Below, piece by piece: positions 4,745 to 40,347 of a DNA stretch of 64,000 nucleotides. The stretch is taken from the sequence record NC_048048.2. One strand, 5' to 3'. The notes beneath the pieces were generated by a model. It was given only the letters and a program-made list of their open reading frames with translations, had not been told where the DNA came from and did no database searches. The translations under genes were made by a program, and so were the position numbers. The first letter of the stretch is position 1. The number at the start of each line of letters is the position of its first letter.

Positions 4745-4772
4745 CGTTATTCTTGACATGGCCGTTAACCAT
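4741..4772 (+). promoter_or_regulatory. GTGACG-TCTTGAC promoter motif with TTAACCAT (CtrA-like) box
   Basis: GTGACGTTATTCTTGAC...TTAACCAT. Confidence 0.6.
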
Positions 4773-4807
4773 GTCATGAATGGCGTCACCAAAGCCCCCG
4801 GACATCC

Positions 4808-5894: not shown

Positions 5895-8171
5895 ATGAAA
5901 CTGCGCCGCCGCCGGCTCATCTGGGACATCGAAACCGATGGCCTGCTCCACGAACTGACCCGCGTCCACGTCCTGACCATTCGCGACATCGACACGCGGC
6001 AGACCTTCGTCTTCCGCCGCAACGATGTGATGGACAACATCCGCGATGGGCTGAAGATGCTCAACGAGGCCGACCTGATCGTCGGCCACAACATCATCGG
6101 GTTCGATAACTACGCGCTGTGGAAGGTCTACGGCGACGAGTACAATCCCCAGGGCACCATGCGCGACACGCTGATCATGTCGCGCATGCTCTACTCGCAG
6201 ATCAAGGACGACGACTTCCGCCTCTGGAAGCGCGGCACCCTGCCGGGCGAGTACATCGGCAGTCACACCCTGGGCGCCTGGGGCGCTCGTCTGGGCTTTC
6301 CCAAGGACGACTACGCCGCTCGCCGCAAGACCGAGGCTACCGAGAACTGGCAGACGATCTGGGGGCTGCCCGACCAGTTCAACAACGACCTGAAGGCCTA
6401 CATCCACTGGTACACCTGGGCCAACTGGAACCAGGACATGGAAGACTACGGCATCCAGGACCTGGACCCGACCGAGGCCCTTTGGCTGAAGATGGAAAAG
6501 GTCGAGTGGTCCGAGGACGCCACGATCCTGGAGCACATGATCTGCGACCTGATGGCGCGGGTCGAGCAGAACGGCATCAACTTCGACCGCACCCTGGCGC
6601 TCCAGATGGAGGCCGAGCTTCGCGCCGAATATGACGCCAAGACCAAGGAAGCCATCCAGCACTTTGGCAAGTGGTTCACCGCCACCAAGTGGCGCAAGGG
6701 CGAGCCGCCGCGCCCCGAGTTTGGCGAGGATGACAGCCGCCTCAACTGGGGCGAGGTCACCGTCCCCAAACGGTCGATCAAGTTCAAGGACCCGATGTCC
6801 AAGGGCGGCGACAAGACCGAAGGCTGCGCCTACTGCCCGATCGTTCTGAAGGAGTTCAATCCCAACTCCCGTCCCATGATCGTCAACCGTCTGGAGACGA
6901 TCTACGAGTGGGTGCCCGAGCGCTTCACCGAGAAGAACACGCCCATCGTCGACGACGAGGTGCTGCGCAACCTTGGCTTGACCATTCCGATCTGCGTCGA
7001 ACTGGCTGAAATCTTCTATTACAAAAAGCGCCTGGGCCAGCTTGCCGACGGCGCCGAATCCTGGCTGCACAACTGTGACGCCGAAGGCCGCATCCACGCC
7101 CGGATCAATCCGGGCGGCACGGTGACCAACCGCGCCAGCCACTCCAAGCCCAACATCGCCCAGGTCCCCCGCGTCGTCTACAAGAAGCTCAAGCAATGGG
7201 TTGAAAAGGACGTCACCTATCGCTGGATCGGCGGCAAGATCGCCTACGGCGTCGTCAAGACCGACAAGCGCACGGGCGAGGAGTATTTCGACCAGAACCT
7301 GACCCCGCTGCTCGATCCGAACGGTGAGCAGTTCGTTGGCGTGCCCGTGGTCGACAAGGAGACGGGCCAGTATGTCCTGGATCGCGACGGCACGATCAAG
7401 ACCAAGCCGACCCTGCTGAAGGGACGCGCCGGCGATCACGGCTGGGACAGCCGCAACCTCTTCATGGTGCCCGAAGGCTGGGTCATGATGGGCGCCGACC
7501 AGAAGGGCATCGAGCTTCGCGCCCTGGCCCACTTCATGTGGGAGTTCGACGACGGCGAATACGCCCAAATCCTACTCGAAGCCGACATCCACGACGCCCA
7601 CACCGCCGCCATGGGACTGGACTCGCGGGACAAGGCTAAGACGTTCATCTATGCGATGATCTACGGGGCGCAGGACTTCAAGCTCGGTGTCACCATCGAC
7701 CCGACGCTCGAAAACTACCCCACCAAGGCCAAGGCCCTGGGCGCCCAGATGCGCGAGCGTCTGATGTCCAGGTATCCCGCCTTGCGGAAACTGATCAAGT
7801 CGGTCCAGCGCACCGCCAAGAAGGGCTACGTCGAGGCCCTGGATGGGCGTCAACTGTTCGTCCGGGCCAAGCACAGCGCGCTCAACACGCTGCTGCAAGG
7901 CGCCGGCGCCACCCTGGCCAAAATCTGGTGCGTCTCGTTCGAGTCGTTCATGGAAGAGGCCGGGTTCAAGCACGGGTGGGACGGAGACTTCGTCATCCTG
8001 GCGTGGATTCACGACGAACTCCAGGTCGCCGTGCGCGACGACCCCGCCGTCAAGATGGCAGCCGAACGCTACATCACCGAGGCCGCCACCTACTCGGGCG
8101 AGCGCGTCAATTTCCGCCTTCCGGTCGAGATCGACGTCAAGTGGGGCACGCGCTGGAGCCACACCCACTAG
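5895..8171 (+). CDS. polA: family A DNA polymerase, T7 gp5-like, with 3'-5' exonuclease
   Basis: WDIETDG and GHNIIGFD exonuclease motifs; DQKGIELR motif A; KTFIYAMIYG motif B (Tyr at the 762-equivalent position); IHDELQ motif C. Confidence 0.95.
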   Translation: MKLRRRRLIWDIETDGLLHELTRVHVLTIRDIDTRQTFVFRRNDVMDNIRDGLKMLNEADLIVGHNIIGFDNYALWKVYGDEYNPQGTMRDTLIMSRMLYSQIKDDDFRLWKRGTLPGEYIGSHTLGAWGARLGFPKDDYAARRKTEATENWQTIWGLPDQFNNDLKAYIHWYTWANWNQDMEDYGIQDLDPTEALWLKMEKVEWSEDATILEHMICDLMARVEQNGINFDRTLALQMEAELRAEYDAKTKEAIQHFGKWFTATKWRKGEPPRPEFGEDDSRLNWGEVTVPKRSIKFKDPMSKGGDKTEGCAYCPIVLKEFNPNSRPMIVNRLETIYEWVPERFTEKNTPIVDDEVLRNLGLTIPICVELAEIFYYKKRLGQLADGAESWLHNCDAEGRIHARINPGGTVTNRASHSKPNIAQVPRVVYKKLKQWVEKDVTYRWIGGKIAYGVVKTDKRTGEEYFDQNLTPLLDPNGEQFVGVPVVDKETGQYVLDRDGTIKTKPTLLKGRAGDHGWDSRNLFMVPEGWVMMGADQKGIELRALAHFMWEFDDGEYAQILLEADIHDAHTAAMGLDSRDKAKTFIYAMIYGAQDFKLGVTIDPTLENYPTKAKALGAQMRERLMSRYPALRKLIKSVQRTAKKGYVEALDGRQLFVRAKHSALNTLLQGAGATLAKIWCVSFESFMEEAGFKHGWDGDFVILAWIHDELQVAVRDDPAVKMAAERYITEAATYSGERVNFRLPVEIDVKWGTRWSHTH

Positions 8172-8186
8172 GGCTTCGTGTCGCCA

Positions 8187-8241
8187 AAAATATCCTGTGA
8201 CGCAATTCTTGACACCGTCCCAGGCCTCCTCTATTAACCAT
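8187..8241 (+). promoter_or_regulatory. GTGACG-TCTTGAC promoter motif with TTAACCAT box
   Basis: 29-nt near-identical copy at 33294-33322. Confidence 0.65.
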
Positions 8242-8265
8242 GACAACGGGAAGGGGCTGACGCCC

Positions 8266-8625
8266 ATGACCAACTCCTCCACCACCCACGAGCCGGAATT
8301 CTTGGCGGCCAACCCCGCCACGGCCAACCTCTTCGACATCGCTCGCGTCGGTGCGCCTCTCCTGGTGCTCGGTGCGGCTGTCTCGACCTTCGCGGCGCTG
8401 CTCACCTTGGGCCTGCACGCCTGGGTCAACCCCTCCATCCCTGTTGTAGGCTTTGGACCCGCCGCGTTCTTCGCGGCTGTCCTGGTCCTCTACATCAGCC
8501 TGCAAAGCCTGATCGCCTCGACGCTTCTGAGCGTCCTAGGCGTGGCCGGCGAAGTGATGGCTGCTGGGGAGCAGGCCAGAACGGTGTCGTCGGAAGACGT
8601 CAAGAAGTTCTTGAGCCTTCGCTGA
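8266..8625 (+). CDS. hypothetical membrane protein
   Basis: Two to three hydrophobic helices; follows a promoter motif. Confidence 0.6.
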   Translation: MTNSSTTHEPEFLAANPATANLFDIARVGAPLLVLGAAVSTFAALLTLGLHAWVNPSIPVVGFGPAAFFAAVLVLYISLQSLIASTLLSVLGVAGEVMAAGEQARTVSSEDVKKFLSLR

Positions 8626-8684
8626 TCGGCGGTGCCGATCAGTCATGAACAATCGCCAAGTCTAAGTCCAATCGAAGGCTAAGT

Positions 8685-9272
8685 ATGCTCCTCTTTTTCG
8701 ACACCGAAACCACGGGCCTGTGGAATAAAGGCCTCCCGATGGGCTCCCCCGAGCAGCCCAAGATCGTTCAGATCGCCGCGCTCCTGACCGAGGACGACGG
8801 CACCGAGGTTCAGAGCCTGAACTTCATCGTCCGCCAGGACCACGTGCCTGAAAAGGCCGCCGCCGTTCACGGCATCACCACCGAAGTCTCCCAGCGCCTG
8901 GGCCTCAACGAAGGCACCGTCCTGACGGTGTTCGAGGAACTGCTGATGCTGGCCGACGTCGTCGTCGCCCACAACGACGAATACGACCGTCAGGTCGTCC
9001 TCAACGCCATCGCCCTGATCGACCAGAAGATTTCCGACCCGTTCGCGGGCAAGAAGGCCTTCTGCACCATGAAGGCCTCCACGCCGATCTGCAAGATCAA
9101 GGGTCCGCGCGGCTACAAGTGGCCCAAGCTGATCGAAGCCCACCAAATCCTGCTGGGCGAAGGCTTCGACGGCGCCCACGACGCCTTGGCCGACGTCCGC
9201 GCCTGCAAGCGCGTCTTCTTCAAGCTCCAGGAAATCATCGCCGAGCGCATCGCCGCCCAGAAGGCCGCCTGA
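8685..9272 (+). CDS. DnaQ-like DEDDh 3'-5' exonuclease
   Basis: FDTETTG, HNDEYD and HDALADV motifs. Confidence 0.9.
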   Translation: MLLFFDTETTGLWNKGLPMGSPEQPKIVQIAALLTEDDGTEVQSLNFIVRQDHVPEKAAAVHGITTEVSQRLGLNEGTVLTVFEELLMLADVVVAHNDEYDRQVVLNAIALIDQKISDPFAGKKAFCTMKASTPICKIKGPRGYKWPKLIEAHQILLGEGFDGAHDALADVRACKRVFFKLQEIIAERIAAQKAA

Positions 9273-9373
9273 TGCCCTGGTTCATGGTCATCACGATCAT
9301 GATCGGCGTCACCTGGATGATCCTGCCGCCGGGCGGGGACCCGCCCAACAACTCCGGCCTCGCGCCCGCTTAA
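9272..9373 (+). CDS. small membrane peptide (33 aa)
   Basis: TGATG coupling; single TM helix. Confidence 0.45.
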   Translation: MPWFMVITIMIGVTWMILPPGGDPPNNSGLAPA

Positions 9374-9382
9374 GACCCCTAC

Positions 9383-10474
9383 ATGACCGCTATCAACTTC
9401 GCCAAGGGCTTCGACGAGTATGTCGCCGCCCACCAAAAGAAGTGGCGTCACGATCGCTCCAAGAGCGTCGGCGCCTCCGAGGCCTTCGGTTGCCTGCGCA
9501 AGGCGTGGTTCGGCAAGCACAACACGCCCAAGGACCGCAACTACAAGGACGACTGGGGCGCCCTCAAGCGCGGCGACGTGATGGAGGAGCACTGGGTCGA
9601 GCCGGTGGTCAAGTGGTACCTGGATCAGCTTCCCGGCAACGTGCGGCTGATCTGGGGCGGCAAGCACCAACGCACCCTGGTTGGCAAGACCGCGCCGGCC
9701 TCGGCCACGCCTGACGGCCTCATCGTCGACGCCGATGATGACGCCCTGGCGCTCTATGGCATCCCGAGCCTGGGCGGCACGGGTTGCTTCAACTTCGAAA
9801 TCAAGTCCATCGATCCGAGAGTAAATCTCAAGGAGGAAAAGGGCATCCATCGCGGTCAGACGATCATGCAGATGGGACTCACCCGTGAGTTGACTTCGTA
9901 TCGCCCGAACTATGCTCTGATCATCTACGTGGATGCGTCGTTCTACAGTGACATGAACTTCTACGTCATCCCGTTCAACCAGGAGACCTTCGAGGCCGGC
10001 AAGGAACGCGCCCGACAGGCCTTCGAGATCAAGAGCGTCGCCGACATCTTCCCGGAAGGTAAGCTGGATGGGTCGTGCGACTACTGCCCCTACACCACCG
10101 CCTGCGCGGTCGCCACTGGCGAAGCCACCCCGACCGACGGCGTCACGACCGAGACGAACACCCCGTCTCCGATCGTCAAGGAATTCGAGGACCTGATCTT
10201 CCTGGAGCGCGAGCTTCAGGCCGAGAAGAAGGTCGCGGAAAAGGCCCACAAGGAGGCCCAGGAACGGCTCAAAGAGCTTTTCCGAGAGGTCGGCACCCGC
10301 CGTTTCCAAGTTGGAGACATCAAGGCGTCGATCACCTGGAACAAGGGCAAAAAGTCCTTGGACCGTAAGGCTATGGAAGAAGACGGCATCGACCTTACTC
10401 CCTACGAGAAGGAAGGCAACGGTTTCGACACCCTGAGGATCACCGAAAAGGGGTCCGGGGTCGACGACACCTAA
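9383..10474 (+). CDS. Cas4/RecB-like PD-(D/E)XK exonuclease with 4-Cys cluster
   Basis: GASEAFGC...TPDG...FEIK...CDYCPYTTAC. Confidence 0.8.
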   Translation: MTAINFAKGFDEYVAAHQKKWRHDRSKSVGASEAFGCLRKAWFGKHNTPKDRNYKDDWGALKRGDVMEEHWVEPVVKWYLDQLPGNVRLIWGGKHQRTLVGKTAPASATPDGLIVDADDDALALYGIPSLGGTGCFNFEIKSIDPRVNLKEEKGIHRGQTIMQMGLTRELTSYRPNYALIIYVDASFYSDMNFYVIPFNQETFEAGKERARQAFEIKSVADIFPEGKLDGSCDYCPYTTACAVATGEATPTDGVTTETNTPSPIVKEFEDLIFLERELQAEKKVAEKAHKEAQERLKELFREVGTRRFQVGDIKASITWNKGKKSLDRKAMEEDGIDLTPYEKEGNGFDTLRITEKGSGVDDT

Positions 10475-10691
10475 CGCGTAAGAGCACGGTAAGCGTACTC
10501 TAAGCTAAGCCAGAGCTAATCGAAGACTATGTCACGGTAAGCCAAGCCCAAGCTACGTCTAAGACCTACCAAGACAAGAACAAGTCCAAGCCTAAGCTAA
10601 GACTGCATTACGCCTAAGACGAAGGCACTCCCCAAAATCTAAGACCACCCCGCCGGCGGCATCCCGCCGCCGGCCAATCCCAAGGATAAGT
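10475..10691 (+). repeat. non-coding YAAG/CTAAG short-motif array ending in a 9-bp GC hairpin
   Basis: About 20 AAG motifs (18 YAAG) in 215 bp, strand-biased; hairpin GCCGGCGGC-ATCCC-GCCGCCGGC at 10652-10674. Confidence 0.85.
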
Positions 10692-11534
10692 ATGTCCACC
10701 CAACTCACCACCACCTCGACCGGCTTCATGGCCACCACCGACGACGCCTTCGCCCTGCTGTCGGAAGTCGCCAATGAAATGGGCGGCGGCTCGGGCGTCT
10801 TCCTGAAGTTCAACGGCAACGACGGCCTGTTCACCTACGGCGCCACCGGCGACGAACTGCCCCTGGGCTCGCAACTGGCCTTCAACGGCATGTCGCTGGA
10901 ACGCGGCTGGATTTGCTGGAAGGACGAAGAAGTCGTCGGCGAGGAAATGGTCTCGTTCCTGACCGGCAAGCCGAAGGACAAGAGCCAACTGCCCGACAAC
11001 GGCCCCTACGAGTCCAACCAGGACGGCTGGCAGGAGCAGATGGCGGTCACCTTCAAGATGACCGAGGCGCCGTTCCACGAACTGTCGTTCAAGGCCACCG
11101 GCGTGACCAAGCTGAACGCCGTCAAGCGTCTGGTGCAGGACTACATCAAGTCGATGAAGGCCAATCCGGGCCTGATCCCGATCGTCGAGATCGACGAGAC
11201 CGAGTTCGAGTCCAAGGCCAAGGGCGCCCGTGGCGCGCGCAAGCACGCTCCGGTCTTCAAGATCGTGGCCTGGGTCACCGAGCAGCAACTGATCGACGCC
11301 CAGGAAGGCGCCGAAGGCGAGTACGAGCCCGAGCCGGAACCGGCGCCGAAGGCCCTGGCCGCCCCGAAGGCGACCGCCGCCAAGCCGGCCGCGCGCCGCG
11401 CCGCCCCGGCTCCCGAGCCGGAACCGGAAGCCGAGGACGACGCTGGCGCCTATGAAGACGAGGCCGAGGCCGAACCGGCTCCCGCGCCGGCGCCGAACCC
11501 GCGCCAAGCCGCCGCCCGTCGCGGCCGCTTCTAG
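10692..11534 (+). CDS. putative single-stranded DNA-binding protein
   Basis: Beta-rich, aromatic N-terminal domain; acidic Pro/Ala-rich tail; lies beside the exonuclease in the replication module. Confidence 0.6.
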   Translation: MSTQLTTTSTGFMATTDDAFALLSEVANEMGGGSGVFLKFNGNDGLFTYGATGDELPLGSQLAFNGMSLERGWICWKDEEVVGEEMVSFLTGKPKDKSQLPDNGPYESNQDGWQEQMAVTFKMTEAPFHELSFKATGVTKLNAVKRLVQDYIKSMKANPGLIPIVEIDETEFESKAKGARGARKHAPVFKIVAWVTEQQLIDAQEGAEGEYEPEPEPAPKALAAPKATAAKPAARRAAPAPEPEPEAEDDAGAYEDEAEAEPAPAPAPNPRQAAARRGRF

Positions 11535-11618
11535 GCCTTAGCGCCCACGACCCCGAAGGCCCGTCCACTCCGGTGGGCGGGCCACCTTCTACCCCGACAA
11601 TTTGAAGAGAGGACTCCC

Positions 11619-12203
11619 ATGACGACGTTCGTGGCGTTTCCCAAGATCGCGCGCCTGAACCGCGAGATCGTGATCACCGAGAAGCTCGACGGCACCAATG
11701 CCCAGGTCGAGATCAACGACGCCGGCGACGACATCGTCTCGGCCGGCTCGCGCAACCGCTACATCACCCCCGAGATGGACAATCACGGCTTTGCGCGCTG
11801 GGTGCGCGACAACCGTGACGAACTGATCAAGCTCGGGCCGGGTCGCCACTACGGCGAATGGTGGGGCAATGGCATCCAGCACGGCTACGGCCTGGGCAAG
11901 GGTGACAAGCGCTTCTCCCTCTTCAATGTCGGCCGCTGGGAAGACCCCGCGACGCGTCCGGCCTGCTGCGGCGTCGTGCCGGTGCTCTATCGTGGCCCGT
12001 TCTCCGAGGCCGCCATCCAGGACGCCGTGGAGCGGCTGCGCACCGAAGGCTCGATGGCTGCGCCCGGCTGGATGCGCCCCGAGGGCGTCATCGTCTACCA
12101 CACCGCCGCTGGCACCCTCTTCAAGGTCACCCTGGAGAAGGACGCCGCCCCCAAGTCGACCTATGACGCCGAGCACGCGGCGCGCATCGCTCAGGCGGCC
12201 TAG
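11619..12203 (+). CDS. RNA ligase, Rnl2-like nucleotidyltransferase domain
   Basis: EKLDGTNA (motif I), YGEWWG, FSLF, EGVIV and FK motifs. Confidence 0.8.
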   Translation: MTTFVAFPKIARLNREIVITEKLDGTNAQVEINDAGDDIVSAGSRNRYITPEMDNHGFARWVRDNRDELIKLGPGRHYGEWWGNGIQHGYGLGKGDKRFSLFNVGRWEDPATRPACCGVVPVLYRGPFSEAAIQDAVERLRTEGSMAAPGWMRPEGVIVYHTAAGTLFKVTLEKDAAPKSTYDAEHAARIAQAA

Positions 12204-12204
12204 G

Positions 12205-12399
12205 ATGAGCACCGCCGCCTGGATCGACGCGCTTTTCGGCGACGGTTTCGTCGACACGCGCACCCCCACCCAGAAGAGGATCGACGACGCCATTGGTGCT
12301 GTCGTCCTCATCCTGGCCTTGGCCATCTCCGCCGCGCCCTGGCTGATCGGCGCCTTCGTCATTCTCCGTTGGCTGGCCAAGCTCGGAGGCGTGATCTGA
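12205..12399 (+). CDS. small membrane protein
   Basis: 64 aa with a C-terminal hydrophobic segment; translationally coupled. Confidence 0.5.
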   Translation: MSTAAWIDALFGDGFVDTRTPTQKRIDDAIGAVVLILALAISAAPWLIGAFVILRWLAKLGGVI

Positions 12400-13721
12400 T
12401 GCAGCTTTCTGGCCAACAGGAAGAGGCGATCAAGGTCATCGTCAAGCGCCTCGTCGGTGACTATCCCGAGCCCCTGACCTATCTGGCGGGCTATGCCGGC
12501 ACGGGTAAGTCGACCATCCTGCCGTTCATCATCGCCTCGCTGGGCTTTGACCCCAAGGACATCGCCTTCCTGGCGCCGACGGGTAAGGCCGCCAAGGTCA
12601 TGACCCAAAAGCTGATGGCCCAGGGCTTCAAGCTGTCGGCCGCCGCCACGATCCACTCGGCGATCTATCGTGCGCGCCCCGCGCCGATCTCGCAACTGGA
12701 AGCGGAGCTTTACGAGGCCCAGACCAGCCGCGAGCGTCTGAAGCTCAACGGCGGCCAACCCGAGGCGATCAATGCGCTGACGCGCACCATCAACCGCCTG
12801 GAGAAGGAACTGGACGACCTCTACACCGAGGAGAAAATCCACTTCCAACTCAACCCCGACAGCCTCGTCAAGGACAAGAAGCTCATCGTCGTCGACGAAG
12901 CGTCGATGGTGGGCCGCAGCATCGCCGATGACCTTCTCTACTTCGGCGTGCCGATCCTGGCCATGGGCGATCCTGGCCAGCTTCCGCCGGTGCAGGACGA
13001 TGCAGGCCTGACCGCCGGCGAGCCCGACTACTTCCTGACCGAAATCCATCGTCAGGCCGCCGACAACCCGATCCTGCAACTGGCGACCATGGCGCGCCAA
13101 GGCAAGATTCTGGTCCCCGGCGTCTACGGTGACGGCCGCGCCGTGGTCATGAAGCGTCGCGACTTTAACAACGGGCACTTCGACTGGGACGCGCCGGCCC
13201 CGCAGTTCATCGTCGGCACCAACGCCACGCGTTGGCGTGTGACTAAGATGCTGCGCCAGGGCTACTGCGTCCCCGGCGCCGAGCATCCGAACTCCGGCCC
13301 GCAGGAAGGCGAGCCGCTGATCATCTGCAAGAACAATCGCGCCTACCCGACCCTGGTCAACGGCACCGAGGTCGATGCGATCGCCTCGCACATGCTCCAC
13401 AAGGGCCAAACCACCTTCCCGTTCAAAATCCAGGACGAGGATGGGCGCAAGTACGAGATCAACGCCTTCCAGGGCCTGTTCGAGGAGCACTACGCCGGCA
13501 AGAAGAACGCCTTCTCGTCGACCTCGCGCTCGGCCTTCAAGGCCCGCAAGAACTCCGTCGAACTGGACTGGGGCTGGGCGATCACCTGCCACAAGTCCCA
13601 GGGCTCCCAATACCCCGAAGTCGTCGTCATCGACGAGAGCGGGGTCTTCCGCGACGACAGCGCCAAGTGGGCCTACACGGCCATCACCCGCGCGGCCGAA
13701 AAACTCACCATCCTGGTCTAG
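12399..13721 (+). CDS. SF1B helicase (Dda/RecD-like)
   Basis: GYAGTGKST, VVDEASM, GDPGQLPPV, RQAADNPI and TCHKSQGSQY motifs. Confidence 0.92.
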   Translation: MQLSGQQEEAIKVIVKRLVGDYPEPLTYLAGYAGTGKSTILPFIIASLGFDPKDIAFLAPTGKAAKVMTQKLMAQGFKLSAAATIHSAIYRARPAPISQLEAELYEAQTSRERLKLNGGQPEAINALTRTINRLEKELDDLYTEEKIHFQLNPDSLVKDKKLIVVDEASMVGRSIADDLLYFGVPILAMGDPGQLPPVQDDAGLTAGEPDYFLTEIHRQAADNPILQLATMARQGKILVPGVYGDGRAVVMKRRDFNNGHFDWDAPAPQFIVGTNATRWRVTKMLRQGYCVPGAEHPNSGPQEGEPLIICKNNRAYPTLVNGTEVDAIASHMLHKGQTTFPFKIQDEDGRKYEINAFQGLFEEHYAGKKNAFSSTSRSAFKARKNSVELDWGWAITCHKSQGSQYPEVVVIDESGVFRDDSAKWAYTAITRAAEKLTILV

Positions 13722-15713: not shown

Positions 15714-15762
15714 GTGACGTTGGGCTTGACCCGTGTCACGAACTGCGTCACACATTAACCAT
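15714..15762 (+). promoter_or_regulatory. promoter motif with TTAACCAT box
   Basis: GTGACGTTGGGCTTGACC...TTAACCAT. Confidence 0.6.
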
Positions 15763-15794
15763 AAGGCCGCAAAAGCCTTCCTGTTCGGTAGCGT

Positions 15795-24197: not shown

Positions 24198-24444
24198 GTC
24201 TTCAGCTTAGCGTCCAACGCTTCTGTGTCAAGAAACGCGACACGAAGAAAGTGCGCTTGACGCATAGCCTAAGCTCGGCCATCCTCCCCTGGCATCGACA
24301 ACCCTGTCTCTAGCACGTCAGGACCGGATTGCGAGCGTGGGGCGCTTCGGCGCGCTGGACTTCGGCGGAGCGCCCCTCGCTGACAAAATTAGCGTCCCGA
24401 CGACACAATGCTTGACACGGAAAACGAGGTAGGTTACAGGTCAG

Positions 24445-24840
24445 GAGTTGTCGGCTGAAGGGCCTTCGGGACCTGGATGACGGAATACACGGAGACTGTT
24501 CTGGACCGGGGTGCGATTCCCCGCGCCTCCACCACCAAGTCTCCCGGCCGGTCCCCACCCAGGGACCTGGGCGTCGCCTTCAGCGACGGCGCCCGATCTG
24601 AACGGCGCGGGAGACTTTGTTATGGGGGCGATCAGCATCGACAGGCAGGGTAAGTAGAAGACGCGACACGGCATGGCTGCCGGTTCCTTCGGGAGCGCTA
24701 GGCCGACTTTGACAAATGTCAACGCTGCTAACGACAACGACGTCGTGGTTTCGACCATGACCTCGGTCAAGCTGGCCGCTTAACGGCTCGGGGTTCAGAA
24801 GGCGCCTTTTCACCCAATGGCCTTCAGCTTGCCCTAAGGG
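24445..24840 (+). ncRNA. ssrA: circularly permuted (two-piece) tmRNA; tag ANDNDVVVSTMTSVKLAA
   Basis: T-arm and CGCCTCC-ACCA (24507-24534) precede the GGGGGCG 5' acceptor strand (24624) giving G3.U70; tag ORF 24727-24783; intervening segment closes a 10-bp stem; outer ends approximate. Confidence 0.92.
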
Positions 24841-24879
24841 GCTCAGAGGACAGGCGGCGCAAGCCGCGCGATCAACACC

Positions 24880-27294: not shown

Positions 27295-27894
27295 TCAACC
27301 CGGCGGGCGGACGATAAGATCATCCTGGGTCACCATCACCAGGACACGCGGCTCGTGCTTCAGGGTCGAGGCCTGGGCGCCACGGACCTGATCGCCTGGA
27401 AGGGAAAGTTCCACATAGCCCATCCTCCAGTCGCCGGCGACCTCGGCCCCATCACCGATATCGCTTTGCCCGCCCCTATGGCTCATCATCCTGGCGCGTT
27501 GCTTGGTGGTCAGCATGACCTGGAAGTAGGGAAACTCGTAGGCCAAGTCCGCCAGGAACCCGGTGTGCTTGGAGGGGTAGTGGACGTGAGCGCCGGGCGC
27601 CCGGAACACCCAGACCTCCTGCTCGCCCAGGCGGTCGGGGACCATCAGCGCCTCACGCGCCCGCTTGCGCTCGATGGCCACAGTCTTGCGCATCGCTTCC
27701 ATCTCGACCAGCTTGGCCTGGGACAGTCTCGTCTCCTCGCTTCGGCCCAGGAGTTCGCAGGTCGCGTCGAAACGCGCCTGGACGTCCTTCTTGACCGCCT
27801 CGTAGAGACTGAGGTCCTTGACCTCGGGCGGCGCGCACAGCACCCTGGTCAGGTCCGCGAGCTTGTCGGCGATGTCGGCATAGGCAAGGCTCAC
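27295..27894 (-). CDS. hypothetical protein
   Basis: GTGA overlap with the helicase stop. Confidence 0.6.
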   Translation of the reverse strand: MSLAYADIADKLADLTRVLCAPPEVKDLSLYEAVKKDVQARFDATCELLGRSEETRLSQAKLVEMEAMRKTVAIERKRAREALMVPDRLGEQEVWVFRAPGAHVHYPSKHTGFLADLAYEFPYFQVMLTTKQRARMMSHRGGQSDIGDGAEVAGDWRMGYVELSLPGDQVRGAQASTLKHEPRVLVMVTQDDLIVRPPG

Positions 27895-29771
27895 CCGATG
27901 GTCTCCACGATGTTGTCTTCCTTGACCTTCAGGGCCTGGGCGATGCGAGCGTCCAGTGAGCCGTTTGCCACGAGGTAGTAGATGAAAATCTTGTCGGACG
28001 TCTGCCCGATCCGGCAGACGCGGTCCTCGCACTGCTCCATCATCGCCGGCGTCCAGTCCAGTTCGACGAACGCCACGTCGTGGGCCGTCGTCAAGGTGTG
28101 ACCCACGCCCATGGCGTGGATGTTGCCGATGATCACCCGGCAGCGGTCGGTCTGCTGGAAGGCGTCCACCATGTTCTGGCGTTCGCGCTGGGGGACCTTG
28201 CCGTAGATGTAGGCCGGATTGTACTTCTTCAGACCCTCGATCAGGGCCTCGACCACATCGGTGTGATAGGCGAAGACGACCAGCTTCTCGCCGCCGTCCA
28301 GGAAGGTCTTGATCCAGTCGATCGCGGCCTTGACCTTGGCCATGCCCAGTTCGCGGCGGACCTGGGCGATTTCCTCGAAGTCGATCTTGACGGCCGGCGG
28401 CTCCAGCCCCAGGACCGCCGAGGCAAAGTCCATGTTGAGCTTGCGCGCGTCGGTCTTCTGCTCGCCGTCGCCCATCGCCATGTCCAGGCCCAGGGCCTTG
28501 GCGCGATCGGCGATCATCTGGCCCTGGAAGGCTTCGTAGTCCTCGACGCTGTTGAAGACCTTGTTGGGGTCCGGCGCCGCCATCATGTGCTCGAACAGCC
28601 GCAGGCTCTGGGCCAGTTCGTCTTCCTTGGTGACGAGGTCCCTGATTTCGGCGCTGTCAAGCGCCACGATAGAGCGCGTCTTGGGCGGAAGCTCGGGCAG
28701 GACCTCGCGTTTGAGGCGCCGGATCATGAAGGTGCGGCGCAGCTTCTCGCCCAGTTCCTTCAGGTTGGTGGCGCCCGAGGTGTCCAGGCCATGGTGCGTG
28801 CGGTAGGCGCCGCAGTAGCGGTAGTAGAAGGCTTCCTGATTTCGGCCCAGCCCCGTGGGATCGAAGGCCTTGACGATCGACCAGAACTCCGCCGGCCGAC
28901 TCATCATCGGCGTTCCGGTCAGGAACACCCGGCGACGCGCCTCGATCGGTTTCCAGGTGACCGGCAGGCGCCGGCCTTTCTTGAAGTCCGCCGGCTGGAC
29001 GCCGCCGCAGATGAAGAGGGTTCTCAAGCTGTCGGGGGTCTTCAGGGCGTGGGCCTCGTCGCAGACGAGGTAGTCCCATTCGCGCTCCTTGATCCTCGCG
29101 GTGAAGCGGTCCAGGATTTCGTAGTTGATGATCACCACGTCGGTGTCGGGCCAGACGTCGACGCGCTTGACCCGCTTAAAGCGCGGCTTTCCGTTCTTGA
29201 AATAGCCGTCGGGGACCTTCTCGACGAAGCTCGCCTCGGCGATGCCGACCGTGAGGCCCTGGGTCTGCCATTTGACCCATTCGCGGCGCCAGTTTTCCTT
29301 CAGCGACGCAGGCACCACGACCAACGCGCTGGTGATCGGTGCATCGTCCGTATAGACCCCGATGCTGTTGCCGCCCAGGATCGCCTGGATCGTCTTGCCA
29401 AGGCCCGGCTGGTCGCCGACCAGCGTGTCCTTGCGCATCAGGATGTACTCGACGCCCGCCTTCTGGAACGGGAATGGCCCGATGCCCTGGTCCTTCAGGG
29501 CCTGGGGGATCGGCGGCTCGAAGTCGGTGAAGGCCTGATAGCTGCGCTCCAGGCTGTCGATCGAATGGGCGCGTTGCAGGGATGCGGCCGAAATCGCCGC
29601 TTCGGTCCACACCACGCCTTCGACGGCCGTGGCGATATCGAGATTGGCTGCCACCCAGGCGCGAGGCTTGGAGTCGGCGTCGAGCGTAAAGCCCGCCTTC
29701 TGCCAGATGATCCGTTCTTCATACGTGCCCAGGCCGACGAACCGGCCGTTGCGATAATCAATCCTGGCCAT
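27891..29771 (-). CDS. SNF2/SWI2-family (HARP-like) helicase
   Basis: GDQPGLGKT, DEAH, LTGTP, RRLKREVL.ELP and EQCEDRVCRIGQ motifs. Confidence 0.92.
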   Translation of the reverse strand: MARIDYRNGRFVGLGTYEERIIWQKAGFTLDADSKPRAWVAANLDIATAVEGVVWTEAAISAASLQRAHSIDSLERSYQAFTDFEPPIPQALKDQGIGPFPFQKAGVEYILMRKDTLVGDQPGLGKTIQAILGGNSIGVYTDDAPITSALVVVPASLKENWRREWVKWQTQGLTVGIAEASFVEKVPDGYFKNGKPRFKRVKRVDVWPDTDVVIINYEILDRFTARIKEREWDYLVCDEAHALKTPDSLRTLFICGGVQPADFKKGRRLPVTWKPIEARRRVFLTGTPMMSRPAEFWSIVKAFDPTGLGRNQEAFYYRYCGAYRTHHGLDTSGATNLKELGEKLRRTFMIRRLKREVLPELPPKTRSIVALDSAEIRDLVTKEDELAQSLRLFEHMMAAPDPNKVFNSVEDYEAFQGQMIADRAKALGLDMAMGDGEQKTDARKLNMDFASAVLGLEPPAVKIDFEEIAQVRRELGMAKVKAAIDWIKTFLDGGEKLVVFAYHTDVVEALIEGLKKYNPAYIYGKVPQRERQNMVDAFQQTDRCRVIIGNIHAMGVGHTLTTAHDVAFVELDWTPAMMEQCEDRVCRIGQTSDKIFIYYLVANGSLDARIAQALKVKEDNIVETIG

Positions 29772-40280: not shown

Positions 40281-40289
40281 CACCCACGA

Positions 40290-40325
40290 GAAAGGCCCCA
40301 GGATCGCTCCTGGGGCCTTCTTCTT
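40290..40325. terminator. terminator at the convergence of the two transcription blocks
   Basis: AAGGCCCCAGGA-TCGC-TCCTGGGGCCTT-CTTCTT. Confidence 0.75.
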
Positions 40326-40347
40326 ATCTCGCCGCTAGGTCGGTGGC

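What the first reader, a model, noticed from the sequence alone, without database searches (positions are those of the whole stretch)
10475..10691. Strand-biased 215-bp YAAG array upstream of the ssb-like gene: origin or RNA decoy?
Between the Cas4-like exonuclease and SSB lies a non-coding, stop-rich, A-rich stretch with about 20 AAG motifs (18 YAAG), all on one strand at 5-20 nt spacing. Higher-order repeats include CACGGTAAGC x2, CTAAGCTAAG x2 and CTAAGAC x4. It ends in a perfect 9-bp GC hairpin just before TAAGT-ATG. A miniature version (CCAAGTCTAAGTCCAATCGAAGGCTAAGT-ATG, about 8656-8687) precedes dnaQ with the same TAAGT-ATG junction. Hypotheses (inference): replication origin or primase-site cluster; an unstructured autoregulatory leader for SSB, as in T4 gene 32; or a multivalent RNA sponge or pseudo-antitoxin. 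No standard annotation explains it.
Basis: partly seen in the sequence, partly recalled or inferred. Interest (0 to 1): 0.78.

Follow-up and report, generated by a model that had tools for sequence, protein, structure and literature searches.

The report
Repeat-studded leader of a phage SSB gene
A 217-base non-coding stretch in a giant Caulobacter phage carries 20 one-strand AAG motifs and a GC hairpin just before a likely single-strand-DNA-binding protein gene, and the same layout recurs across the phage subfamily, so it is most likely an mRNA control region for that gene and not a replication origin.

Summary
The window is Caulobacter phage CcrSC (NC_048048.2, 124001-188000). Region 10475-10691 holds 20 AAG, 18 YAAG and 7 CTAAG on the + strand, and no CTT. 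This exceeded all 5000 dinucleotide shuffles and is unmatched in 288 kb of the genome.

The downstream gene gp497 is annotated 'nucleotidyltransferase'. It models as an OB-like protein whose only significant solved match is the phiC31 gp3 RDF, a family shown to bind ssDNA.

In 12 other fetched genomes and contigs of the subfamily (Dolichocephalovirinae), the leader of this gene has one-strand (T/A)AG triplets, most often 6 nt apart, plus a 9-12 bp GC hairpin with compensatory changes. The motif flavour differs by lineage. One further contig has only a weak version, one subfamily-like contig lacks the array, and so do five outside phages.

Between CcrSC and RB23 the array diverged about as fast as 4-fold sites, yet both keep 18 AAG where 6.8 are expected.

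Best explanation (confidence 0.45, inferred): an intercistronic mRNA operator that the SSB-like protein binds cooperatively to limit its own translation. It works like the T4 gene 32 operator but is not a member of it. Origin, primase-cluster and sponge readings found no support.

The parts
8209..8245 (+). Promoter- or operator-like motif (TTGAC ... TTAACCATGACA) before gp500. It is the nearest such motif upstream of the array and the likely start of the gp500-499-498-497 transcription unit.
   Evidence: The motif recurs before the portal gene, gp121, the endolysin gene, gp502, gp500 and gp489. It is absent from 10475-10691. Its promoter function is inferred.
8622..8642 (+). Hairpin (9-bp stem, 3-nt loop) at the end of gp500, on the 5' side of the mini-array.
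   Evidence: Hairpin scan. RB23 has a different sequence here (A3) that by my own reading can also form a hairpin; this was not tested with a tool.
8643..8684 (+). Mini-array: 4 AAG (2 CTAAG) and an AAGG Shine-Dalgarno-like element, ending in TAAGT directly before the ATG of gp499.
   Evidence: the 3' 30 nt are nearly identical in RB23, whereas the region as a whole is 67% identical. TAAGTATG occurs only at the gp499 and gp497 starts in 288 kb.
8685..9272 (+). gp499, a DEDDh (DnaQ-like) exonuclease. Its codon bias ranks 4th of 40 genes in the window.
   Evidence: Pfam RNase_T 8.8e-13; phrog_192; Nc 27.3.
9383..10474 (+). gp498, a RecE/Cas4-like PD-(D/E)XK exonuclease and the upstream neighbour of the array.
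   Evidence: phrog_434 1.6e-38; weak Cas4 match; Nc 37.1, rank 35 of 40.
10475..10651 (+). Main array: 18 AAG, extended motif C-Y-A-A-G-M-C, period 5-6 nt and multiples, no CTT, predicted to be weakly structured as RNA.
   Evidence: The motif count is kept at 18 in RB23 despite 35% divergence.
10612..10626 (+). Small hairpin (4-bp stem GCCU/AGGC) inside the array, presenting an AGACGA-containing loop.
   Evidence: The same loop, closed by different stems, occurs in CcrBL9, Colossus/CcrPW, L022 and L025. Variants occur in Kikimora, Papperlapapp and phiCbK. It is absent in RB23.
10652..10674 (+). Perfect 9-bp all-GC hairpin with a 5-nt loop and no T-run after it.
   Evidence: Twelve genomes and contigs carry a hairpin at the same place; all 117 cells pair and 8 of 12 pairs show compensatory change (A5).
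10675..10691 (+). Translation initiation region: a C-rich stretch, then CCAAGGATAAGT with an AAGGA Shine-Dalgarno element at 10682-10686. The last two AAG motifs lie here.
   Evidence: Together with the hairpin, this stretch is 92% identical between CcrSC and RB23, against 65% for the array.
10692..11534 (+). gp497, an SSB-like protein: an OB-like beta core (about residues 30-205) plus a disordered Pro/Ala/Glu-rich tail ending in an aromatic residue. It is annotated 'nucleotidyltransferase'.
   Evidence: AF2 core model pLDDT 94. The only PDB match with E<1e-3 is phiC31 gp3 RDF, chain 9teh_I. That family binds ssDNA in vitro (PMC11795197). It has the lowest Nc of 40 genes.

Best explanation
The stretch is the intercistronic mRNA leader of the phage's SSB-like gene gp497. 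It acts as a translational operator.

The RNA offers a long, weakly structured platform of phased AAG triplets (UAG in sister genera) about one every 6 nt. One or two small hairpins sit within it, and the last motifs overlap the Shine-Dalgarno element and start codon.

The proposed mechanism is as follows. Once free ssDNA is saturated, the SSB-like protein binds this platform cooperatively and covers the ribosome-binding site. That caps its own synthesis, and perhaps also that of the DnaQ-like exonuclease gp499, which has a miniature copy of the leader.

Shown here: the array, its significance, its uniqueness in the genome, its conservation as an architecture, the hairpin covariation, the selection on motif number, and the SSB-like fold.

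Inferred: that the element acts as RNA, that gp497 is the binding protein, and that binding represses translation.
For: - The array is real, strand-specific and unique in 288 kb of the genome.
- It sits only before the SSB-like gene. Twelve other genomes and contigs of the subfamily keep one-strand (T/A)AG arrays at 5.4-13.5 per 100 nt, against 2-3 per 100 nt in the flanks. They also keep a GC hairpin 8-53 nt before the ATG. The L021 contig has only a weak array and a 5-bp hairpin.
- Spacing peaks at 6 nt, with 81 of the listed spacings at 5-7 nt and secondary peaks at 10-11 and 16-17. This suits single-strand binding, one triplet per protomer, better than duplex binding.
- Motif number is under selection. 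CcrSC and RB23 arrays are 65% identical, close to the 62% at 4-fold sites of the adjacent exonuclease gene. Both still hold 18 AAG, 11 of them at shared positions. A neutral simulation gives 6.8 +- 2.1, and none of 20000 runs reached 18.
- In the hairpin all 117 cells pair, 8 of 12 pairs show compensatory change, and no shuffle matched this.
- As RNA the array ranks 3rd least structured of 1596 170-nt frames, at -35.5 against -63.7 +- 8.9 kcal/mol.
- No promoter-like motif lies inside the region; the nearest upstream one is before gp500. The hairpin has no T-run. The region is therefore probably transcribed through.
- gp497 has an OB-like core and a disordered tail. Its only significant solved match is phiC31 gp3 (E 4e-4 to 7e-4, probability 1.0). 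The TG1 homologue of gp3 binds ssDNA and was likened to the T4 gp32 core (PMC11795197). No other SSB is annotated in this genome, and none was found in phiCbK-like phages (PMC3556154).
- gp497 has the strongest codon bias in the window (Nc 26.6), equal to the major head protein (27.5). The head-protein leader has no array. The array is therefore not a generic device for high expression.
- Precedent: the T4 and RB69 gene 32 operator is a folded element plus an unstructured leader of more than 40 nt with repeated UUAAA/UAAA covering the ribosome-binding site. Both parts are needed for autogenous repression (PMC535899).
Against: - No binding, expression or transcript-end data were available. The phage sheet of the phiCbK RNA-seq table is not held as text.
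- The SSB assignment rests on a moderate fold match (TM 0.41, 12% identity). There is no sequence-level hit and no zinc site like that of gp3 or gp32.
- The low RNA structure follows from base composition. The array is no less structured than its own shuffles (z = -1.0).
- The layout differs from T4. Most motifs lie 5' of the hairpin, and no pseudoknot was predicted.
- One close relative, contig L020 (57% protein identity), has a C-rich 103-nt leader with no array. The element is therefore dispensable or replaceable.
- A conserved triplet core (UAG/AAG) is unexpected for a protein thought to bind without sequence preference.
Confidence: 0.45

Rival explanations
1. The leader is an mRNA processing, stability and translation-enhancer element read by host factors. 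A single-stranded A-rich platform recruits ribosomal protein S1, Hfq or RNase E. Cleavage within it separates the gp497 message from the weakly expressed exonuclease message. The GC hairpin then protects the new 5' end, giving a stable, heavily translated SSB mRNA.
For: - Codon bias jumps across the leader: Nc is 37.1 (rank 35 of 40) for gp498 and 26.6 (rank 1) for gp497. gp499, which has the mini-array, ranks 4th.
- The hairpin has no T-run and lies 17 nt before the ATG, a position typical of a 5' stabiliser.
- The platform is weakly structured.
- T4 gene 32 mRNA is also processed and unusually stable (own knowledge).
- Motif number, not motif position, is conserved, as expected for a low-specificity platform.
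Against: - The major head gene has equal codon bias but uses a GC-rich leader with a strong GAGGAG element and no array. The phage therefore does not need arrays for high expression.
- A host-factor site should keep the same motif in all phages of one host. Instead CcrSC (CTAAG), Colossus (CTAGA) and phiCbK (CCTAG) all infect Caulobacter with different motifs.
- UAG/AAG triplets with 2-4 nt spacers are not the known preference of S1, of the Hfq distal face (contiguous A-R-N) or of RNase E (own knowledge).
Confidence: 0.2
2. The arrays are operators for a different, dedicated RNA-binding regulator, phage- or host-encoded and multimeric like TRAP, HutP or T4 RegA. It co-regulates a small regulon of replisome genes, gp497 and gp499.
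For: - Two leaders share the layout and the exact junction TAAGTATG, which occurs nowhere else in 288 kb.
- Phased triplets with 2-4 nt spacers are the signature of ring-shaped RNA binders (TRAP: G/UAG with N2-3 spacers; HutP: UAG with N4 spacers; own knowledge).
- The lineage-specific motif flavour implies a co-evolving specific reader.
Against: - No candidate regulator was identified.
- In Colossus the gp499 homologue starts 2 nt after the preceding gene, leaving no room for a mini-array. Only the SSB-gene leader is shared by all lineages examined, so the adjacent gene product is the simplest reader.
Confidence: 0.15
3. The element works at the DNA level, as a replication origin, a primase-site cluster on the complementary strand (CTTAG/CTA), or a loading zone.
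For: - It lies inside the replication module, next to the DNA polymerase, exonucleases, SSB-like gene and Dda-like helicase.
- Its GC content is locally lower (53.5%).
- Its complement is rich in CTA and TTA, trinucleotides that some bacterial primases use (own knowledge).
Against: - GC skew does not turn here.
- It is not AT-rich enough for an unwinding element and has no iterons of 15-22 bp.
- No primase gene was detected; gp474 is SNF2-type, and PMC3556154 reports none.
- Strict strand bias and 5-7 nt phasing are not expected of duplex-binding sites.
- The motifs run up to and overlap the ribosome-binding site in every lineage.
- A classical origin-like hub exists at genome 2232-3702, with repeated 12-mers, phased A-tracts and TTGACGC boxes.
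Confidence: 0.07
4. The element is a multivalent RNA sponge, decoy or pseudo-antitoxin that titrates a host nuclease or defence protein.
For: Many copies of a short motif on one transcript. UAG- and UAA-like motifs might mimic nuclease targets.
Against: - There is no tandem unit, no Rfam family and no toxin or defence neighbour.
- The array is always fused to the start of the same gene and overlaps its ribosome-binding site. It is never a free-standing RNA gene with its own promoter and terminator.
Confidence: 0.03
5. The array is a neutral by-product, a decayed slippage microsatellite in a dispensable spacer.
For: Position-by-position identity of the array (65%) is close to the 4-fold-site rate of the adjacent exonuclease gene (62%). 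One relative lacks the array.
Against: Motif number is held at 18 against a neutral expectation of 6.8 +- 2.1. The architecture persists in lineages with only about 40% protein identity. TRF finds no tandem unit.
Confidence: 0.03

Closest known systems
Translational operator of bacteriophage T4 / RB69 gene 32 (autogenous control of the SSB gp32)
   Same: - Both lie in the leader of the phage's SSB gene.
- Both combine a stable folded element with a long unstructured stretch that carries several copies of a short A-rich word and includes the Shine-Dalgarno element and AUG (PMC535899).
- In both cases the operator sequence diverges quickly among relatives while the principle is kept.
   Different: - The word is AAG or UAG, not UUAAA.
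- The array is 100-200 nt with up to 20-37 copies, against about 40 nt in T4.
- The folded element is a plain GC hairpin (plus a small AGACGA-loop hairpin), placed 3' of most repeats. In T4 it is a 5' pseudoknot.
- The protein has no sequence similarity to gp32.
- The host genome is 64% GC.
- Repression has not been shown here.
TRAP-binding site of the Bacillus trp leader, and HutP-binding sites of the hut leader (facts from own knowledge)
   Same: Both have many (G/U)AG or UAG triplets on one RNA strand, separated by 2-4 non-conserved bases and read one triplet per subunit. The pooled spacing here peaks at 6 nt, with most values at 5-7. UAG is the core in most lineages.
   Different: No TRAP or HutP homologue was sought or seen. 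The likely reader is an OB-fold protein. The predicted outcome is translational control, not transcription attenuation. CcrSC uses AAG.
phiC31 gp3 / TG1 gp25 family (serine-integrase RDFs that are phage SSBs)
   Same: gp3 is the closest solved structure to gp497 (chain identity confirmed). The TG1 member binds ssDNA but not dsDNA in vitro, and the gene lies among replication genes (PMC11795197).
   Different: The match is at fold level only (12% identity, TM 0.41). gp497 has a single Cys and so no zinc site. It also has a long acidic Pro/Ala tail. An RDF role is not expected, although a tyrosine recombinase is annotated in the genome.
T4 RegA-type translational repression of several early mRNAs (own knowledge)
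   Same: A small set of replication-gene mRNAs share a recognition element at the ribosome-binding site; here these are gp497 and gp499, both with the junction TAAGTATG.
   Different: No RegA homologue was identified. The arrays here are far longer than a RegA site.

Membership tests
T4 gene 32-type autogenous SSB operator | Lies in the 5' leader of the phage SSB gene and reaches the Shine-Dalgarno element and AUG | tested here: met
   The array ends in CCAAGGATAAGT-ATG. The downstream gene has an SSB-like fold.
T4 gene 32-type autogenous SSB operator | Unstructured stretch of more than 40 nt with repeats of a short A-rich word | tested here: met
   MFE rank 3 of 1596 frames and 18-20 AAG. The word differs from UUAAA.
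T4 gene 32-type autogenous SSB operator | 5'-terminal RNA pseudoknot as nucleation site | tested here: not met
   Only simple hairpins were found (10612-10626, 10652-10674), and they lie 3' of most repeats. The folding tools used cannot predict pseudoknots, so a cryptic one is not excluded.
T4 gene 32-type autogenous SSB operator | Encoded protein homologous to gp32 | tested here: not met
   No sequence hit to any PDB chain. No gp32 chain appears among the listed fold matches.
T4 gene 32-type autogenous SSB operator | The protein represses translation of its own mRNA | not testable with these tools
   Needs binding and expression data.
Phage SSB (protein gp497) | OB-fold ssDNA-binding core | tested here: inconclusive
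   Core model pLDDT 94. Best match is phiC31 gp3 (E 6.6e-4, TM 0.41). Next come OB-containing MCM N-terminal domains and RPA at E 0.02-0.5. No Pfam or NCBIfam hit.
Phage SSB (protein gp497) | Flexible acidic C-terminal tail ending in an aromatic residue | tested here: met
   Residues from about 206 to 280 have pLDDT 48-62, are rich in Pro, Ala and Glu, and the last residue is Phe.
Phage SSB (protein gp497) | Sits in the replication module, and no other SSB is present in the genome | tested here: met
   It lies between the exonucleases and the Dda-like helicase. No SSB appears in the annotation tables seen. None was found in phiCbK-like phages (PMC3556154).
Iteron-type replication origin | Direct repeats of about 17-22 bp, an AT-rich unwinding element, and a skew or coverage inflection | tested here: not met
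   No tandem or long repeats beyond 28-nt families at 64-71% identity. GC is 53.5%. There is no skew turn at 10.5 kb.
Intrinsic terminator | GC hairpin followed by a T-run | tested here: not met
   The terminator scan finds none on the + strand here. The hairpin is followed by CAATCCCAAGGA.
ToxI-like repeat antitoxin RNA or other Rfam family | Tandem repeats of about 34-36 nt next to a toxin gene, or a match to a curated covariance model | tested here: not met
   TRF finds none. PADLOC finds nothing for the neighbours except a generic DEDDh match. Rfam gives no hit in the leader at E<=10 and none at gathering score in 12 related loci.
TRAP / HutP-type triplet-repeat RNA operator | At least 6-11 (G/U)AG triplets with 2-4 nt spacers on one strand | tested here: met
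   Spacing histogram: 19 at 5 nt, 45 at 6 nt, 17 at 7 nt. There are 6-37 (T/A)AG per leader. In CcrSC the triplet is AAG.
TRAP / HutP-type triplet-repeat RNA operator | A cognate TRAP or HutP protein is present | not tested
   No search for mtrB or hutP homologues was made.

The most novel reading that the evidence does not exclude
An OB-fold phage SSB of the gp3/gp32-like kind reads phased (U/A)AG triplets on its own mRNA, one triplet per protomer as TRAP and HutP do. Operator motif and protein co-evolve by lineage (CTAAG, CTAGA, CCTAG, GTTAG). The same protein also throttles the proofreading exonuclease through a miniature operator. This would be a new class of sequence-tuned SSB autoregulation in giant GC-rich phages.
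Probability: 0.25. Interest if true: 0.8.

Novelty: new variant of a known kind. Interest (0 to 1): 0.62.

Why it matters
- phiCbK-like phages are long-used tools of Caulobacter biology, yet their genome paper reported no SSB (PMC3556154). This analysis points to the missing SSB, which is mis-annotated as a nucleotidyltransferase.
- It also points to a conserved, unannotated control region in front of that gene.
- If the operator reading holds, it would be a second, independently evolved case of the T4 gene 32 circuit, in an unrelated phage group and in a GC-rich setting.
- Its unusually legible grammar (phased triplets, lineage-specific words) could show how a 'non-specific' SSB picks out its own message. 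That question is still open for gp32 itself (PMC535899).
- Even under the rival readings, it defines a new RNA motif class for annotating Dolichocephalovirinae genomes.

Tried and rejected
- Rfam search of the region at E<=10, and of 12 related loci at gathering score: nothing relevant.
- Tandem Repeats Finder: no array, so this is not a tandem satellite.
- Sigma-70 promoter scan: none in 8000-12500. The phage's own recurrent TTGAC...TTAACCATG motif is absent from the leader.
- Sequence searches for gp497 against PDB, Pfam and NCBIfam: no informative hit. A profile search of 5.8 billion proteins returned only unnamed proteins or ones carrying the 'nucleotidyltransferase' label.
- Test for selection on unstructuredness beyond composition: rejected. 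The array folds no worse than its own dinucleotide shuffles (z = -1.0). With the hairpin included the region is more structured than its shuffles (z = -3.7).
- RNAalifold on a MAFFT alignment from the small hairpin to the ATG for 9 lineages: the alignment put the hairpins out of register and no consensus structure came out. I therefore aligned the hairpins alone. Papperlapapp was dropped because MAFFT misaligned it.
- phiCbK infection RNA-seq (PMC10688885): the phage sheets of Table S3 are not in the stored text, so no expression values could be read.
- Generic translational enhancer: rejected, because the major head gene lacks any array.
- Generic intergenic feature: rejected.
- TAAG-rich spots at genome positions 3.1 kb and 22.9 kb belong to a different motif, GTTAAGGTTAAC.
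- Not done: whole-genome uniqueness test in a second genus, and a search for TRAP- or HutP-like proteins.
Full report
**What and where.** The window matches Caulobacter phage CcrSC (Bertelyvirus, Dolichocephalovirinae; NC_048048.2) at 100% identity. Window coordinate equals genome coordinate minus 124000. The finding is the 217-nt gap between gp498 and gp497. gp498 (9383-10474) is a RecE/Cas4-like exonuclease (phrog_434, 1.6e-38). gp497 (10692-11534) is annotated 'nucleotidyltransferase'. Both lie in the replication module, which runs: T7-like DNA polymerase, two DEDDh-type exonuclease genes, gp498, gp497, RNA ligase, Dda-like helicase.

**Observation.**
- The + strand has 20 AAG, 18 YAAG, 11 TAAG and 7 CTAAG, and no CTT.
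- A perfect 9-bp all-GC hairpin lies at 10652-10674, and TAAGT-ATG follows.
- The extended motif is C-Y-A-A-G-M-C, and half of all G in the array are the G of AAG.
- No dinucleotide shuffle of the region (0 of 5000) reached the observed count for any motif.
- In 288 kb of the genome (98% of its unique sequence) the next-densest 217-nt frame has 11 YAAG, in coding sequence. The region holds 7 of the 68 CTAAG.
- None of the other 36 intergenic regions in the window looks like it.
- TRF finds no tandem unit and Rfam finds nothing.

**The downstream gene.**
- gp497 has no Pfam, NCBIfam or PDB sequence match.
- AlphaFold models with 38 and 52 homologues give a confident beta-rich core (pLDDT 94 for residues 28-206) and a disordered Pro/Ala/Glu tail ending in Phe.
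- In both Foldseek searches the only PDB match below E = 1e-3 is chain 9teh_I (E 4.3e-4 and 6.6e-4, probability 1.0, TM 0.41 for the core). OB-containing MCM N-terminal domains and RPA follow.
- That chain is phiC31 gp3, residues 23-239.
- Its TG1 homologue binds ssDNA but not dsDNA, and was likened to the T4 gp32 core (PMC11795197).
- The phiCbK genome paper states that no SSB was detected in these phages (PMC3556154).
- gp497 has the strongest codon bias of the 40 longer genes in the window (Nc 26.6). The major head protein has Nc 27.5.
- I conclude that gp497 is probably the phage SSB. This is a fold-level inference, not proof.

**Conservation within the genus.** The array aligns in CcrBL9, RB23 and BL47 (A1).
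- Between CcrSC and RB23 the array part is 65% identical, close to the 62% at 4-fold sites of gp498. The stretch from the hairpin to the ATG is 92% identical.
- Each phage nevertheless has 18 AAG in the array part (20 in the whole leader in all four phages). Eleven sit in shared columns and seven have turned over in each lineage.
- Random substitution at 35% leaves 6.8 +- 2.1 AAG, and none of 20000 runs reached 18.
- Selection therefore acts on motif number, not on exact sequence.

**Conservation across the subfamily.** I fetched the leader of the gp497 homologue from 12 further phage genomes and metagenome contigs with the same gene order.
- All but contig L020 carry one-strand arrays of (T/A)AG triplets at 5.4-13.5 per 100 nt, against 2-3 per 100 nt in their flanks. 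In L021 the array and hairpin are weak.
- The word differs by lineage: CTAAG in Bertelyvirus, CTAGA in Colossus/CcrPW, CCTAG in phiCbK, CTTAGA in Papperlapapp, ATAGA in contigs L022-L024. Kikimora has mostly GTTAG, with 31 TAG in 274 nt.
- Pooled spacings peak at 6 nt (45 cases; 19 at 5 and 17 at 7), with secondary peaks at 10-11 and 16-17.
- Each leader also has a 9-12 bp GC-rich hairpin 8-53 nt before the ATG, followed by a C-rich stretch and, in several lineages, more motifs up to the ATG.
- On an alignment of 12 hairpins, all 117 cells pair and 8 of 12 pairs show changes on both sides. No shuffle (0 of 500) reached this, and slid registers pair only 28-57% of cells. One caveat applies: I picked the best hairpin in each leader, so the 100% pairing is partly by construction. 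The compensatory changes at a fixed place are the informative part.
- A second, small hairpin presenting an AGACGA loop, closed by different stems, occurs in CcrSC (10612-10626), CcrBL9, Colossus/CcrPW, L022 and L025, with variants elsewhere. RB23 lacks it.
- Contig L020 (57% protein identity) has a C-rich leader without any array.
- Five phages outside the subfamily also lack it: Cp1R7A-A1, Lacusarx, vB_EliS-L02, Mwe-JY26 and RpAliso.

**Transcription context.**
- The consensus scan finds no sigma-70-like promoter.
- The phage's own recurrent motif (TTGACA, a short spacer, GTTAACCATG) lies before the portal gene, the endolysin gene, gp502, gp500 and gp489, but not in the leader. The nearest upstream copy is at 8209, before gp500.
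- The hairpin has no T-run, unlike the terminator-type hairpins elsewhere in the window.
- The leader is therefore most likely transcribed as part of a gp500-499-498-497 message. This is inferred.
- As RNA the array is the third least structured of 1596 170-nt frames. This follows from its composition, since its own shuffles fold equally weakly.

**The miniature copy.** The 59-nt gap before gp499 (DEDDh exonuclease) has a 9-bp hairpin overlapping the gp500 stop, four AAG, an AAGG element and TAAGT-ATG.
- Its 3' 30 nt are almost unchanged in RB23.
- TAAGTATG occurs only at these two start codons in the genome.
- gp499 ranks 4th in codon bias.
- In Colossus the gp499 homologue starts 2 nt after the preceding gene, so no mini-array is present there.

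**Mechanism.** The element has six properties: strict strand bias, phasing of about 6 nt, motifs that overlap the ribosome-binding site, restriction to the SSB-like gene, selection on motif number, and a motif word that changes with lineage while the architecture stays.
- The simplest single account is an mRNA operator read by a co-evolving single-strand-binding protein. The adjacent gene product is the obvious candidate.
- This works like the T4/RB69 gene 32 operator, which has a folded nucleation element plus an unstructured leader with UUAAA repeats covering the ribosome-binding site (PMC535899).
- Its triplet-plus-spacer grammar recalls TRAP and HutP sites (own knowledge).
- It is not a member of the gene 32 operator family. 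The word differs, the hairpin is not a pseudoknot and lies on the other side of the array, and the protein is not a gp32 homologue.
- I give this model 0.45.
- The main rival (0.20) is a host-factor platform for processing, stability and translation. The codon-bias jump across the leader favours it. The array-free head-gene leader and the different words among phages of one host weaken it.
- A separate dedicated regulator gets 0.15.
- DNA-level origin or primase readings get 0.07. There is no skew turn, the region is not AT-rich, and there are no iterons and no primase. A far better origin-like hub lies at genome 2232-3702.
- Sponge or decoy (0.03) and neutral slippage (0.03) are disfavoured.

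**Novelty.** I found no description of this element in the held literature or in Rfam. It is best filed as a new variant of a known kind, autogenous SSB leader control. If the triplet-reading model holds it has real potential to be more than that.

**Limits.**
- No expression or binding data could be reached.
- Genome-wide uniqueness was tested only in CcrSC.
- 6 kb of the CcrSC genome (238001-244000) was not scanned.
- The SSB assignment is at fold level only.

Noticed in passing
window 24442-24874 (+): An unannotated permuted (two-piece) tmRNA gene sits in the 1175-nt 'empty' gap of the RefSeq record. Rfam RF04321 scores 75.8 bits. ARAGORN gives a tag peptide ending in KLAA. It lies just before three tRNA genes. 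The phiCbK genome paper does not mention a tmRNA.
   Followed up: partly
window 4753-4782, 8209-8245, 15726-15772; also genome 35291, 57310, 123016: A recurrent promoter- or operator-like motif (TTGACA, about 5 nt, GTTAACCATG then T/A/G then CA, partly palindromic) precedes the portal gene, gp121, the endolysin gene, gp502, gp500 and gp489. It may be a phage-specific promoter or regulator site.
   Followed up: partly
outside the window: NC_048048.2 2232-3702 and 22930-23000 (L014): A 1.47-kb non-coding hub in the 23.9-kb terminal repeat holds about 7 TTGACGC boxes, about 10 copies of GTTAAGGTTAAC and phased A-tracts (period about 10-11). It is the most origin- or regulatory-hub-like DNA seen in this genome.
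   Followed up: no
window 10692-11534: gp497 and its homologues carry the propagated label '(polyribonucleotide) nucleotidyltransferase', with no Pfam, NCBIfam or PDB sequence support. The fold points to an SSB. Identity at 4-fold sites between CcrSC and RB23 is 86% here, against 62% in the neighbouring exonuclease gene.
   Followed up: yes
L020:1398-1500 (metagenome contig JASCQV010009068.1): A Bertelyvirus-like relative (57% protein identity, same gene order) has a C-rich 103-nt leader with no array and no strong hairpin. It is a natural loss or replacement of the element.
   Followed up: partly
window about 40281-40347: Cumulative GC skew turns near 40 kb, where + strand genes meet - strand genes. 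A 12-bp hairpin flanked by AAGG and CCTT (40292-40319) looks like a bidirectional terminator. Throughout the window the coding strand has C>G.
   Followed up: no
window 10612-10626 and homologous places in L002, L005, L006, L022, L025: A small hairpin has a conserved AGACGA loop and covarying stems (GCCU/AGGC, GGACUU/AGGUCC, GACC/GGUC) just upstream of the large GC hairpin. It may be a specific recognition or nucleation site. RB23 lacks it.
   Followed up: partly
window 27891-29771 (-): The gene annotated 'DNA helicase' (gp474) is SNF2-type (SNF2-rel_dom plus Helicase_C), not a replicative DnaB or primase-helicase. No primase was seen in the annotation tables.
   Followed up: partly
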